This document shows positions 1 through 4,839 of a DNA stretch of 64,000 nucleotides, piece after piece. Under the pieces are notes generated by a model. That model made no database searches and was not told the origin of the DNA. It saw nothing but the letters and a program-made list of their open reading frames with translations. Made by a program: the position numbers and the translations under genes. The DNA comes from Amoeboaphelidium protococcarum X5 (taxonomy: Eukaryota > Fungi > Aphelidiomycota), in NCBI GenBank assembly GCA_023515725.1, contig JALDTO010000013.1, forward strand, positions 1 through 64,000. The letters run 5' to 3'. Position 1 is the first letter of the stretch, and each line of letters starts with the position of its first letter.

Positions 1-72
1 CTCTCCGTCTGGGAATCGAACCCAGCTTACCCGCGTGACAGGCGGGGGTACTAACCAATATACTAACGAAGA
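1..72 (-). tRNA. tRNA-Asp (anticodon GTC)
   Basis: Reverse complement TCTTCGTTAGTATATTGGTTAGTACCCCCGCCTGTCACGCGGGTAAGCTGGGTTCGATTCCCAGACGGAGAG folds as a cloverleaf: acceptor TCTTCGT/ACGGAGA, anticodon arm CCCGC-CTGTCAC-GCGGG, T arm CTGGG-TTCGATT-CCCAG. Confidence 0.97.
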
Positions 73-76
73 TTCG
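67..76 (+). repeat. Left copy of 10-bp direct repeat CGAAGATTCG (target-site duplication candidate)
   Basis: Covers the first 6 nt of the tRNA (TCTTCG on minus) plus 4 nt upstream; identical to 4112-4121. Confidence 0.7.
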
Positions 77-3000
77 GGTACCTTACTACTCTTAAGCCAA
101 ATGTCGCTACAAAATTGTCGCTAACACGATCAAACGAATGTCGCTGACAATGTTGTTGACAATGTCGCTACATAAACTGCGCGTGCGACCAACACTGTTT
201 CAGAAATATCAGCTTCAGTATCAGATATACAGTTGCCTATATCTGACTCTGATATCAGCATTCAAAATAAAAAGTGCCGTGAGAAGCCTAAAAGAAAGTC
301 GTAGTCAAAATATAGTATGATTTAATTTCCAATCTCAATACTTATTTCATTACTTTTGTAGAGCGAACTTCACTGTTAAGAGAGATTTTGAGAATGAACA
401 CTACCAATGGAATGTCCATCAGCAATTATGTCCCTCCTCCTGGTGCAAGGAAGATCAAGAGGCAGAGAGAAGACGCAGAAAATGCACCGATCCATCCTGG
501 TAAGACTTGGAAGTGCCCGATATGTAAAAATCTTCATTTCCCATCTAATAAGAAGCCGCACACTAAATTTTGTTTGGAATAGTTAAAGAAGAACAACAGT
601 ATCGCAGGTTCCGCGAATACTTTGTCAAGTTGGCTGACTGGAGCATCCTTACAATCAGTGGACTCTTTCGCTAATGTACCAGTTCATCAATCCGCGTCTG
701 ATCAGACGCCTGAAACAAATGATATTAATGCTCATCATGATACTACCTCCTCAGTCGAAAATGATGATCAAGTTAATGCCACGTTAGTGATTGAGTAGAA
801 AGATTAGAATTGGAGAAGTCATCCCTCCACCGCATTTATAGTCAAGTACACTGATGAGATTGACTACGCCATTAAAGGAACAGGTTCGCGCGGCTATCAA
901 TGCAATGCAACGTCGTCAAGGTGTCATGGTGTCTGCGATTGCAAGCCGCTGAATCCTCTGTCCTGGCGTGATATCTGGATTTATCCGCCTAATCCTTTAT
1001 TAGTCTCAGATTATATGGAGAGCTAGGATTTTGTGAAGGAGAAAGTTATATTCTGGACGCCAGAAGTGTTTTTCCATCATCTTGGTGTTCGCCACATGCC
1101 TTGTCCAGTTCATGGCGTTGTGGATGGTCACGTTAAGGTAGCAGGCTGGTCAGCAGTAGGGCCTCGAAAAGTAATAGGCATTGGTCAGTCGTATTACATC
1201 ATGTTCAAGAGGTACAAATGCAATCTGTGTCACTGTGGTACTGGTGGCAGGACTGGTAAGGAGTTTCGTGGAATAGATCCAGATACTTTGCAGCATCTTC
1301 CTCCTCATGTTTAGCAATAGTTGCCGTGTACGGTGATTGACAACACGATCCTGGACAACTAATTGATTTAATTAATGGATAGGATGATCATGCGAGGAGT
1401 CTCTTTTAATGAGTTTGTAAAGATGTTGGATGAGCTGTTCAACAACTAGCATTAATCAAGACATCTTGCCTATCTGTCCGCATCAACATTTGTTAGAAGG
1501 AACCCATAGAAGACTTTAATGTTTTAAGCTTTGCCTGCACTGATTGACCCATTTCCAGAATTCAGCGACAAAGATTAGTATAACGTATCCATTCCATCCA
1601 CTACTGTTTTAAAGAAATTCTATTATAAGAGCCAAATGGATGTGTATGATCTGAAGAACGCCGCTGTCGCGCAAGTTACTGGCAAAGTTTTGAGCGGTGA
1701 TCACACTTTCAAAGCAGCCAAGGTGCCTGTGTCTAAGTCTCAGTAGATATTTGAGGGATTATACTCCTTGGTGAATGAGTATGGCCAAGTAGCTGGATTC
1801 TGGCTTGTGCCAAACAAAAGTCTGAAAGAGTTGACTGGTGAATTTGAAGTCTTGAAGCAGCGCTATGCGGCCAAAGATGAAGAGGGTCCTCAGGCTTTCT
1901 TCACAGATCTCTGCTGCACTGAAAGAGCATTTCTCTCTGATATGTTTGAATCTCTGTCAGCTACTGGATAAGGATAGCGAGTACTCTTGGATATATTTCA
2001 TTTCATGGAGCGGTATCCTGTTAAGAAGAAACATCCTCTATACTCTCTCTTTGCCTCCAACCTCCGCGACGCGATATTCATCTGTTCTGAAGAAGACATG
2101 CAAGATGTGAAGTCAGTATTACAGCAGCGTGGAGTATCAGATAAGTAAATGGATCAGATCAAGAGAAGCTATCTATTGCGTAATGGTAAAGTGAGAAGAT
2201 TTGTTCCACCTGCGGATATTTTGTCGAATAGAATTGATCAGGTGGTCTAAATGTTCAGAGCGGTTAACAGTGAGTTCATTGATGATCAAGTAATGAAACA
2301 TCACGAGCGTAATCTGAAGCACGCCAAAGATGGCTGTTTATCAGATCCTCCTGGTGTTGACATGTACTTGCAATTAAAGCCTGGAGATGATGGATCTTTT
2401 AAGTAGTTCAAGTGTTTTAGAGGTACCAGCCAATAAGAAGGATATCACATGATGTTGTACAATGCGTTTTAAGCAAAGTCTATCTCTCCTGAGCTATATA
2501 ATGTTATGCTCATGGACTTTGTCTACAGAAGAAATCAAGATGCGGCACTGACCTGTGGGCTGACTCCGGATTTTCATATTTACAACCCACTAGTGCTGAG
2601 CTAAATTAAGCAGTTGTATGTCGACAATGCGAAATACTTCAAGTGTCCTGTTTTTGAGAATCTGACCATTCCACAGGTATCTGAATTCTCAAAATCTGTT
2701 AAATTTGGCTGTAGTAAGTATTTGGGCAAATCTCTTGATCTAAAGAACATTTCTGACTAGTAGCTGATGATGGAATGCGAAGGTGGCTTTGATGAAGAAC
2801 TGATTGATGCACTGGCCGATCCAGTTGAAGTTGATTTGACTGTTATTGATATGGATTAGAGTGATATATCTACTGAGCCCATCAAGCTGAACTCTGATGA
2901 TATGATCTCTAAGTTTGCATTCAATGTCATATCACGTCCCGTCTCCTCCCAAAAAGAGCTCATCTTATTCATGTCACTGTTTGAACAATATTGCACCAAG

Positions 3001-4111
3001 AAAAACGGTGATGATAAGTAAGTAGATTATGAGTAAATGGCTGATCGATGGAATTTTCTGGTTTATAACAAGATTGCCGCCTGCTCAAATTAGTCTGAAG
3101 TTGATGATTTGTTATCAGAATACTCTTTTAAAGCACCAAGCCATTTGAAGAGTTTTGAAGATATTGTGGAACGTAAGTTGGCATGCAAATACGCGATTGA
3201 TCCATTTAAGGCCCAGTTCAGACAGCTATAAAATCATTTGACTGACCCAACAGCATTGCATATTCCGTTCGAAATTCCGTAGTTGCATTAGGTGTCTACT
3301 GAGTAAACTGTCTAAGTAGTTGAACATGTATCTGTAGAAACACAGACTTCATTGAACAATTTGAGCTGCATCTGTCCTGCTACTCAGTCTGTTTAGAGTG
3401 TCAATGATTTGCTTGCTACTGCAGATTAGGATATTTAGAGATTAGTTGATAGTATAGACGATGCTTACTTCACCAATCTGGATATGGGCACTTTGTTCAA
3501 TCCAGTTTTGGGTCTGCCTGATGGTGATGATATTCCTAGAGTTGACAATTTTGGAGAGAATGTAGACATCAACGAACAGCCGACCTTTAACTAATTAACT
3601 TATCATACCGTCGATATCATTTAAGCTGATACTGGGCCTGTCACAATGACTGAGGCTGTCAATTTGACTGAACTGCTGCGTTAGAGATTCGGCGACGACG
3701 TGTTGACACCTGAAAACGGATTTGTCAATGAAGAAGAGTTGGACAGTAATTTGAGAAGCGAATCAGTGAAACAAGTCTGCAAAATCTGCTGGAAGCCAAG
3801 ATTGATGGCTGATTCCAATTAATGTACTGAAGGCCATTCTTCCAAAAGATGCGATGCATCAAGTTAGTTAGACGATTCTTTGTTGTAAATGCGTACAAGT
3901 CTCTATAAAAAGTTCAGAAAGCGTGTAGAAAGAGAGAGAAAGTTGAAATAGACGTGATTTTATGAACTGATTGAGTAATTGAGTGGATATGATCGCAGAT
4001 CTTCGGTTTCTTCTTACTCATCCCTTGAAATCCGTATAAAATATCGCAACCGACCTGCGGTCGGCAGCGATATAATTTTTTCCCGACTAGGCGTATAACC
4101 ATATAATTTGC
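77..4111 (+). mobile_element. Dada-like DDE DNA transposon inserted at the 5' end of tRNA-Asp
   Basis: Single large transposase gene flanked by the identical 10-mer CGAAGATTCG at 67-76 and 4112-4121; no clear terminal inverted repeats; directly abuts a tRNA gene. The right boundary is inferred from the direct repeat. Confidence 0.75.
101..3957 (+). CDS. Dada-like DDE transposase (~1270 aa; probable exon 1 101-314, intron 315-361, exon 2 362-3957; alternative start ATG 394)
   Basis: Open in table 6 up to TGA 3955-3957. Motifs: SGDHTFK (D at 1699), NEYGQV, FFTDLCC (D at 1906), LDIFH (DxxH, 1990-2001), FRGTSQQEGYH (E at 2437); Cys/His clusters near both termini; basic NLS-like KKCREKPKRKSQSKYKR across the splice. 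Confidence 0.85.
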
Positions 4112-4121
4112 CGAAGATTCG
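4112..4121 (+). repeat. Right copy of 10-bp direct repeat CGAAGATTCG
   Basis: Exact match to 67-76, 154 nt downstream of the transposase stop. Confidence 0.7.
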
Positions 4122-4839
4122 CTTGTAGAGCTGATTTGATGAGTGTTAATCTACAGCAAGTATATGTAGATACAATAGGAAAACCACCAGAGCAGGTTCG
4201 AGGGACAGACACAAGATGAAATAGTATAACGTGCAAATAAGTAAAAACTATATTAACACGATGATCATAAAAAGAAGGATGTACTCAGACATCCGCATAT
4301 ATAACTCAAGGCGTGGGAAACATCGGTAGCGACATGAGGCGTGGGAAGATCAGTACGCCACTCAGCACCGAGATGTGGTATCAGCCTCATGACCAGGTGT
4401 TACGTTAACATGAAAATTTAATTTTTGTTAAAATATATTTTCTAAAATTTGACTAAAATATGAGGTATATTCGACACAGCATAGTACATGTAAAATGTTA
4501 GAGAGTATCACGATTCATTTGATTAAATTGTCTACTCCCTATCCATGACAATAGTGCCTTAATGTAGCAGGAGCTAATAGATTGAACTCAAAGCAGTTTG
4601 ACGTGTTAGTTTCAAATCAGCTTTACGTGAGACTTTATTTCGTTTCATCATCAAAAAGCGTCAAGCTGATATGCCGACTTGTTCTTTGTACTGTAGGCGT
4701 TCAAAGTGAATGAGACTGTTTCTGCTTCCTGTTTCCATTTCTTCTTTTGCTGCAGAACGTTTTCTCTTTACCGTCTTTCTATTTACAATTTTGTTGTTTA
4801 GACTTATTGCATAAATATATTCAGTGCTATTTATCAATT

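What the first reader, a model, noticed from the sequence alone, without database searches (positions are those of the whole stretch)
1..4121. Intact tRNA-Asp-targeting Dada-like DNA transposon that leaves its target gene whole
Seen: an uninterrupted ~1270-aa DDE transposase (D..D, DxxH, RGT..E..H) lies between two copies of CGAAGATTCG. The repeat contains the first 6 nt of tRNA-Asp, so the tRNA is complete and only its upstream flank is displaced. Known: Dada-superfamily transposons lack clear TIRs, make ~6-7 bp duplications and target U1/U6/tRNA genes. Inferred: this is a potentially active, site-specific safe-harbour integrator aimed at the tRNA 5' boundary, with a longer (10 bp) repeat, in an aphelid-like host. 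I do not know of such a family being described.
Basis: partly seen in the sequence, partly recalled or inferred. Interest (0 to 1): 0.85.

Follow-up and report, generated by a model that had tools for sequence, protein, structure and literature searches.

The report
Active Dada transposon without tRNA targeting
This is a recently active DNA transposon of the Dada group in an aphelid (a relative of fungi); it has about 20 copies at unrelated places and only one sits at a tRNA gene, so it is not a tRNA-targeting element but an exception to the published rule that Dada elements insert only into small-RNA genes.

Summary
The element is real; the targeting reading is wrong. Window 76-4112 (4,037 bp, GGGTACC...TTTGCC) is a Dada-superfamily DDE transposon of Amoeboaphelidium protococcarum (TAA/TAG = Gln; 1,187-aa transposase). 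The duplication is 8 bp (GAAGATTC), not 10. The genome holds 13 full copies >=99.8% identical, plus truncated and older ones (19 left, 21 right ends). Their flanks are unrelated and their 8-bp duplications differ. Only this site is at a tRNA, three of four tRNA-Asp genes are empty, and at least three copies sit in long ORFs. Copies in a second strain and a metagenome, and three sister families, also lie away from RNA genes. There is only a weak palindromic preference (SAANNTTS), which this site fits. What is new: published Dada families with defined ends all target small-RNA genes and are given 6-7-bp duplications, and the fungal/algal branch had no defined ends. Here that branch has mapped ends, 8-bp duplications and no targeting. 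A tandem dimer with a 6-bp spacer and an IS256-like predicted fold suggest a testable end-to-end junction step. First readers of this scan noted other copies in this genome.

The parts
1..72 (-). tRNA-Asp(GTC) gene, body intact; one of four identical genes (two homeologous pairs), the only one occupied
68..75 (+). Left target-site duplication GAAGATTC (tRNA nt 1-5 plus 3 upstream bases)
   Evidence: single copy in the empty allele L041
76..4112 (+). Dada-superfamily DNA transposon, family A, 4,037 bp, ends GGGTACC... and ...TTTGCC (only GG/CC complementary)
   Evidence: same boundaries in 13 full copies, in a second strain and in a metagenome contig
99..172 (+). Four subterminal direct repeats (A/T)TGTCGCT at 101, 115, 138 and 162; candidate transposase binding sites, also seen in sister families B and C
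   Evidence: function inferred
101..314 (+). Possible upstream exon (ATG at 101) of an annotated 1,269-aa model; intron 315-361
   Evidence: P0053 matches this splice; no RNA evidence
394..3957 (+). Transposase ORF, 1,187 aa in code table 6 (19 TAA and 24 TAG read as Gln): DUF6729/zinc-finger region, D436 (nt 1699), D505 (nt 1906), D533xxH536 (nt 1990), E682 (nt 2437), C-terminal Cys/His cluster
   Evidence: identical to database protein P0052
4041..4073 (.). Right subterminal palindrome (ATATCGC..CCGACC/GGTCGG..GCGATAT); a similar palindrome lies at the same place in families B and C
   Evidence: (z = -3.4); function inferred
4113..4120 (+). Right target-site duplication GAAGATTC
4144..4410 (.). 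Separate element: 267-bp solo LTR (TGTTAA...TTAACA) of a Ty3/gypsy-type retrotransposon, about 27 bp upstream of the tRNA in the allele without Dada; absent from the homeolog

Best explanation
An autonomous, recently active DNA transposon of the Dada superfamily (the branch that holds Dada-1_ES and Dada-1_LB) that integrates at many unrelated sites. Inferred steps: the RNase H-fold DDE transposase binds the subterminal TGTCGCT/TATCGC motifs rather than long TIRs, frees the GG...CC ends, and joins them to target DNA with an 8-bp stagger; repair gives the 8-bp duplication. Target choice is a weak palindromic preference (about SAANNTTS, AT-rich core), not recognition of an RNA gene. The tRNA-Asp site GAAGATTC fits that preference exactly and is one of about 20 sites; it leaves the internal-promoter tRNA gene whole, so it is probably tolerated. 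Shown: ends, duplications, dispersal, near-identity, intact ORFs, empty allele, protein family. Inferred: binding sites, chemistry, present-day activity.
For: 13 full copies 99.8-100% identical with an intact 1,224-codon frame; 19 left and 21 right ends; contig depth about 1,600-1,800 over the element against 81 on the unique flank (rough). Exact 8-bp duplications, all different, at 11 sites in this genome, at the 5'-shortened L014, at L052 and L056 in a second strain and at three family C sites. No shared flank sequence. ARAGORN and Rfam find an RNA gene at the junction only here. The 16 duplications match each other 3.47/8 against 2.75/8 for random 8-mers (0 of 5,000 draws reached it); A is enriched at positions 2 and 3, T at 6 and 7. 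Protein motifs match Dada-1_ES, Dada-1_LB and Dada-1_Ec32 block by block, by eye. Relatives carry the DEDDy exonuclease between the second D and DxxH, as Dada-1_LB/ES do. Best structural match is ISCth4 of the IS256 family (Z 13.2, 338 aligned, rmsd 5.0).
Against: Three full copies (L004, L009, L017) and two unpaired right ends show no matching duplication, and two show only 6 bp (L005, L055); these may be assembly swaps, recombination or imprecise reactions. One family C left end lies 82 bp from a tRNA 3' end (coordinates only) and a U3 gene lies about 480 bp from copy L012, so a mild bias to RNA-gene neighbourhoods is not excluded. No raw RNA reads were available, so expression is untested. 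Reference Dada proteins could be compared only by eye, not placed in the tree.
Confidence: 0.88

Rival explanations
1. Site-specific tRNA-Asp 5'-boundary integrator with a 10-bp repeat.
For: One insertion overlaps tRNA nt 1-5 and leaves the gene whole; empty allele exists; described Dada families target tRNAs (PMC3706591, PMC8869645).
Against: All other copies lie at unrelated non-RNA sites; three of four tRNA-Asp genes are empty; the duplication is 8 bp; C98:28290 is the same locus split at a scaffold gap, not a second hit.
Confidence: 0.02
2. Same element, but with a weak regional bias to open chromatin near Pol III and other RNA genes on top of the sequence preference, possibly a relic or precursor of targeting.
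For: Two of about 25 sites of families A-C lie within 100 bp of a tRNA. Leaving out this selected site, one in 24 has a chance of about 3-7% for 100-250 tRNA genes.
Confidence: 0.2
3. Mechanistic alternative to plain cut-and-paste: one end first attacks DNA about 6 bp outside the other end, as IS256-family elements do (copy-out/paste-in), giving junctions, circles or tandem dimers with a 6-bp spacer, then integrates with an 8-bp duplication.
For: L056 is a head-to-tail dimer with outer duplication GAAATCAA and spacer AATCAA, its last 6 bases, and the junction is in an independent read contig (X8). Crossing-over between duplications would leave 8 bp. ISCth4 makes A/T-rich 8-bp TSDs and 6-8-bp junction spacers, best at 6 (PMC7780238), and is the top fold match. 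Zebrafish Dada-U1 shows the same 8-bp flank and 6-bp tandem spacer (PMC3706591).
Against: One dimer only; an insertion next to an existing end with a 6-bp stagger gives the same picture, and 6-bp duplications occur (L005, L055). Fold similarity does not fix the pathway. No circle junction was listed for this strain, but contigs drop rare forms.
Confidence: 0.3
4. A MuDR, hAT or KDZ/Zisupton element (8-9-bp duplications are typical of these) rather than Dada.
For: 8-bp duplications, GG...CC ends and IS256/MULE-like fold.
Against: No MULE, hAT or KDZ Pfam hit on the full protein, only DUF6729; motifs and exonuclease insertion match Dada references; an HMM of agaric DUF6729 proteins scores it at E 3e-81 across the core; no long TIRs.
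Confidence: 0.05

Closest known systems
Dada-1_ES / Dada-1_Ec32 (Ectocarpus) and Dada-1_LB, Dada-2_LB (Laccaria) (PMC3706591; PMC12477816)
   Same: Same motif series along the transposase (zinc finger, DH[TS]FK, D..CC, LD.FH, CLSDP.G, RGT...E..H, .RWN); same exonuclease insertion point in sister families of this genome.
   Different: Family A lacks the exonuclease. Their ends, duplications and targets were not defined (Dada-1_Ec32 is listed as 'incomplete', TSD '?' in 2025); here ends and 8-bp duplications are mapped at many sites.
Target-specific Dada families of fish, Daphnia and Perkinsus, including Dada-tD (PMC3706591; PMC8869645)
   Same: DDE with DxxH, N- and C-terminal Cys/His clusters, no long TIRs, subterminal repeats, tandem copies with a 6-bp spacer, some copies with unmatched flanks.
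   Different: They insert at one position inside U1, U6, 5S or tRNA genes with stated 6-7-bp duplications; this family inserts at unrelated sites with 8-bp duplications. It is shorter (4,037 bp against 4,666-10,979 bp) and has at most one small intron.
IS256 family (ISCth4) and eukaryotic MuDR/MULE
   Same: Predicted fold (Z 13.2), C/DxxH motif, A/T-rich 8-bp duplications, 6-bp end-to-end spacer in one dimer.
   Different: About 11% identity; no TIRs beyond GG/CC; three times longer protein; copy-out/paste-in is not shown here.
KDZ/Zisupton
   Same: 8-bp duplications (own knowledge of Zisupton); found in fungi and algae.
   Different: No KDZ or CxC Pfam hit; motifs are those of Dada.

Membership tests
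Dada superfamily | DDE triad with DxxH after the second D | tested here: met
   D436, D505, D533xxH536, E682, conserved across relatives; RNase H fold in the model
Dada superfamily | Sequence similarity to reference Dada transposases | tested here: met
   Block-by-block motif match to Dada-1_ES, Dada-1_LB, Dada-1_MB and Dada-1_Ec32, by eye only; agaric DUF6729 HMM at E 3e-81. No computed score against the references themselves.
Dada superfamily | N-terminal CCCC and C-terminal CCHC zinc fingers | tested here: inconclusive
   N-terminal site is C237/H240...C276/C279, with CxxC in most relatives; C-terminal CxxC...H....C from residue 1129. Positions agree; spacing differs from the zebrafish example.
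Dada superfamily | No terminal inverted repeats; subterminal repeats | tested here: met
   Ends GGGTA / GGCAA share only GG; subterminal TGTCGCT and TATCGC motifs
Dada superfamily | 6-7-bp target-site duplication | tested here: not met
   8 bp at 14 family A and 3 family C sites; 6 bp at two. The 2013 authors did not rule out 8 bp.
Dada superfamily (target-specific families) | Insertion at a fixed site inside a multicopy small-RNA gene | tested here: not met
   One of about 20 loci at a tRNA; the others unrelated. So it is filed as a variant with a Dada transposase, not as a target-specific Dada family.
Dada, LB/ES subgroup | DEDDy exonuclease between the second D and DxxH | tested here: not met
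   Absent from family A; present in sister families P0011 and P0045 and in P0001, P0014
MuDR/MULE | MULE transposase domain, long TIRs, 9-bp duplication | tested here: not met
   No Pfam hit; no long TIRs; 8 bp
KDZ/Zisupton | KDZ transposase and CxC domains | tested here: not met
   No Pfam hit at E up to 0.1
IS256-type copy-out/paste-in pathway | Circular intermediate with an end-to-end junction and short spacer | tested here: inconclusive
   One chromosomal dimer junction with a 6-bp spacer; raw reads were not available

The most novel reading that the evidence does not exclude
Untargeted insertion with an 8-bp duplication is the general or ancestral state of Dada, RNA-gene targeting is a derived trait of some lineages, the published 6-7-bp duplication is an undercount caused by identical targets, and Dada moves through an IS256-like end-to-end junction with a 6-bp spacer. 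That would be a copy-out/paste-in-type step in a eukaryotic DDE transposon.
Probability: 0.2. Interest if true: 0.8.

Novelty: new variant of a known kind. Interest (0 to 1): 0.5.

Why it matters
A 2026 review still states that each Dada family inserts specifically in tRNA, rRNA or snRNA genes (PMC13565253), and the largest survey kept only copies flanked by RNA genes (PMC8869645). These aphelid families are a clear counter-example with many independent sites. Because the targets differ, the duplication length can be read without ambiguity (8 bp), which the targeted families do not allow. A compact, probably active, untargeted Dada transposase is the natural comparison for asking which part of the protein gives fish Dada its specificity, and it suggests that Pfam DUF6729 is part of a Dada transposase. 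It is not a safe-harbour tool.

Tried and rejected
10-bp repeat: rejected, the outer bases are the element's ends. Second tRNA insertion at C98: same locus split at a scaffold gap. Nested arrangement on C205 (L013, L019, L020): two sites with similar duplications joined across N gaps, treated as an assembly artefact. A 383-bp 'MITE' in L056: it has an N gap and is a collapsed second copy. Domesticated single-copy gene: rejected. Genic against intergenic test: too crude, 86% of random positions lie in a 120-codon table-6 ORF; only the three long-ORF cases are used. Pfam on stop-free pieces gave only a faint DUF6729 hit. Word-index searches did not reach animal Dada proteins. The tree is the quick version, has no reference Dada rows and is used only to show that families A, B and C are sisters. 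A right-end pattern search was badly built and told nothing. No paper held in the library mentions DUF6729 or aphelid transposons in substance. Reference Dada sequences in paper supplements have no tool reference, so they were not typed in; they were compared by eye.
Full report
Observation. The window starts with a tRNA-Asp(GTC) gene on the minus strand, 1-72. CGAAGATTCG stands at 67-76 and 4112-4121 and nowhere else in the window. Between them is a frame free of TGA from 283 to 3957. From the ATG at 394 it gives 1,187 aa, with 19 TAA and 24 TAG read as Gln beside 16 CAA and 18 CAG. This equals database protein P0052.

Boundaries. A DNA search of the genome found 13 full copies at 99.8-100% identity, two shortened at the 5' end, two at 91-93%, and fragments at contig ends. 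Pattern searches count 19 left and 21 right ends. All copies start GGGTACC and end TTTGCC (one TTTGCG), so the element is 76-4112, 4,037 bp. It covers tRNA nt 1-5 and three upstream bases. The homeologous locus L041 has the tRNA followed by a single GAAGATTC and the same downstream sequence, which proves an insertion. Read contigs of this strain and of an unrelated biofilm sample also hold the empty form.

Targeting. Eleven sites in this genome have exact 8-bp duplications, all different; L014 keeps an 8-bp duplication although 27-28 bases of its left end are gone. Flanks share no sequence, except L001 with L025, which is the same locus split at a scaffold gap. ARAGORN and Rfam find an RNA gene at the junction only here; a U3 gene lies about 480 bp from L012. 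There are four identical tRNA-Asp genes in two homeologous pairs and three are empty. At L007, L011 and L012 the rebuilt empty site lies inside ORFs of 671, 594 and at least 538 codons. Three copies from a second strain (GCA_023515745.1) sit at other sites without RNA genes, and a full-length contig in a biofilm metagenome has non-tRNA flanks. The 16 duplications are more alike than random 8-mers (3.47 against 2.75 of 8; 0 of 5,000 draws), with A at positions 2-3 and T at 6-7. GAAGATTC fits this weak palindrome exactly. Site-specific tRNA targeting is refuted. A mild regional bias remains possible: a family C end lies 82 bp from another tRNA (coordinates only), a chance of about 3-7%.

Sister families. 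Family B (L026/L046) and family C (4,288 bp) share the GGGTACC start, the TGTCGCT repeats, a right-end palindrome and a GCC end and form one clade with family A (quick tree). Family C has exact 8-bp duplications at three unrelated sites. An exonuclease-bearing family D (GGGGG...AGAGCC) has 7-of-8 matches at two unrelated sites in the second strain. None of the fetched loci has an RNA gene nearby (L059 was not scanned). About seven more Dada-like loci exist but could not be fetched.

Protein. The only Pfam hit is DUF6729. Relatives come from metagenomes, Paraphelidium, Klebsormidium and agarics. Several carry a DEDDy exonuclease between the second D and DxxH, the arrangement reported for Dada-1_LB and Dada-1_ES (PMC3706591). 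The motif series of Dada-1_ES, Dada-1_LB, Dada-1_MB and Dada-1_Ec32 in the paper supplements matches this protein block by block; this was judged by eye because those sequences have no tool reference. Catalytic residues are D436, D505 and E682, with D533xxH536. An AlphaFold model of residues 140-790 (pLDDT 86.5) matches ISCth4 of the IS256 family best (Foldseek E 4.5e-6; Z 13.2 over 338 residues at rmsd 5.0), ahead of integrases, Hermes and P.

How it most likely works. Shown: fixed ends, staggered insertion with an 8-bp duplication, a recent burst to about 20 copies with intact ORFs. Inferred from the C/DxxH group: the transposase binds the subterminal motifs, cuts at the GG/CC ends and integrates with a weak target preference. 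One detail points further. L056 is a head-to-tail dimer with outer duplication GAAATCAA and spacer AATCAA, confirmed in a read contig. Crossing-over between duplications would leave 8 bp. ISCth4 joins one end 6-8 bp outside the other and makes A/T-rich 8-bp duplications (PMC7780238). Zebrafish Dada-U1 shows an apparent 8-bp flank and a 6-bp tandem spacer, from which the authors chose 6 bp while not ruling out 8. So the Dada duplication may be 8 bp generally and the 6 bp a junction spacer. This rests on one dimer; I give the IS256-like step about 0.3.

Comparison. Kojima and Jurka found that all Dada with definable ends were in small-RNA genes. The 2022 survey kept only copies flanked by RNA genes and already lists tRNA-Asp-targeting Dada-tD. 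A 2025 library lists the Ectocarpus Dada as incomplete with unknown duplication, and a 2026 review repeats that each family is target-specific. I found no paper on an untargeted Dada with mapped ends, but Repbase and subscription journals could not be searched. The element has a Dada transposase and fails the two insertion criteria, so it is a new variant, not a target-specific family.

The neighbour. A 267-bp solo LTR at 4144-4410 lies about 27 bp upstream of the tRNA in the allele without Dada. Another copy ends 4 bases before a tRNA-Glu, and related relics cluster upstream of other tRNAs. This retrotransposon, not the Dada element, is the tRNA-associated one here.

Limits and rules. Window pieces were searched apart by reference. 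Only assembled contigs were available for reads, so depth is a rough guide, and expression and rare circles are untested.

Verdict. Observation partly confirmed, targeting refuted. A real, recently active, untargeted Dada variant with 8-bp duplications. Interest 0.5.

Noticed in passing
window 4144-4410; L032-L035, L037-L040, L042: Solo LTR of a Ty3/gypsy-type element with 4-bp duplications; copies or relics lie just upstream of tRNA-Asp, tRNA-Glu and tRNA-Lys genes, but one full copy (C207) has no tRNA within 1.5 kb. Looks like Ty3-style Pol III-upstream preference.
   Followed up: partly
L056:5718-5724 (second strain): Head-to-tail dimer of the element with a 6-bp spacer equal to the last 6 bases of the 8-bp duplication; the second copy is collapsed at an N gap.
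   Followed up: partly
L014 and L015 left junctions: Copies lacking the first 27-28 and 56 bases; L014 keeps a perfect 8-bp duplication, which suggests an aborted cut at the left end followed by repair.
   Followed up: no
L004, L009, L015, L017, L029, L047: Copies with unmatched flanks. L004's left flank holds GAATCCCT plus CCCT, and GAATCCCT is L015's right flank on another contig: possible rearrangement between copies or an assembly swap.
   Followed up: no
G000 C154:350500, C155:888512, C231, C162:526242, C136:81732, C264:112205, C264:1496882, C146:195038, C179, C233:257579: Further Dada-like families, several with a WRN-type exonuclease inside the DDE core; ends and targets not examined.
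   Followed up: no
G000 C9:100 and C9:183-254: A family C left end lies 82 bp from the 3' end of a tRNA gene (coordinates only).
   Followed up: no
P0052 194-383; P0075-P0115: Pfam DUF6729 covers the zinc-finger region ahead of the DDE core of Dada-type transposases, which are abundant as 'hypothetical proteins' in agaric genomes.
   Followed up: partly
L041/L044 and L042/L043: Loci come in pairs 87-91% identical, as expected for a hybrid or duplicated genome; the second copy serves as an empty-site control.
   Followed up: yes
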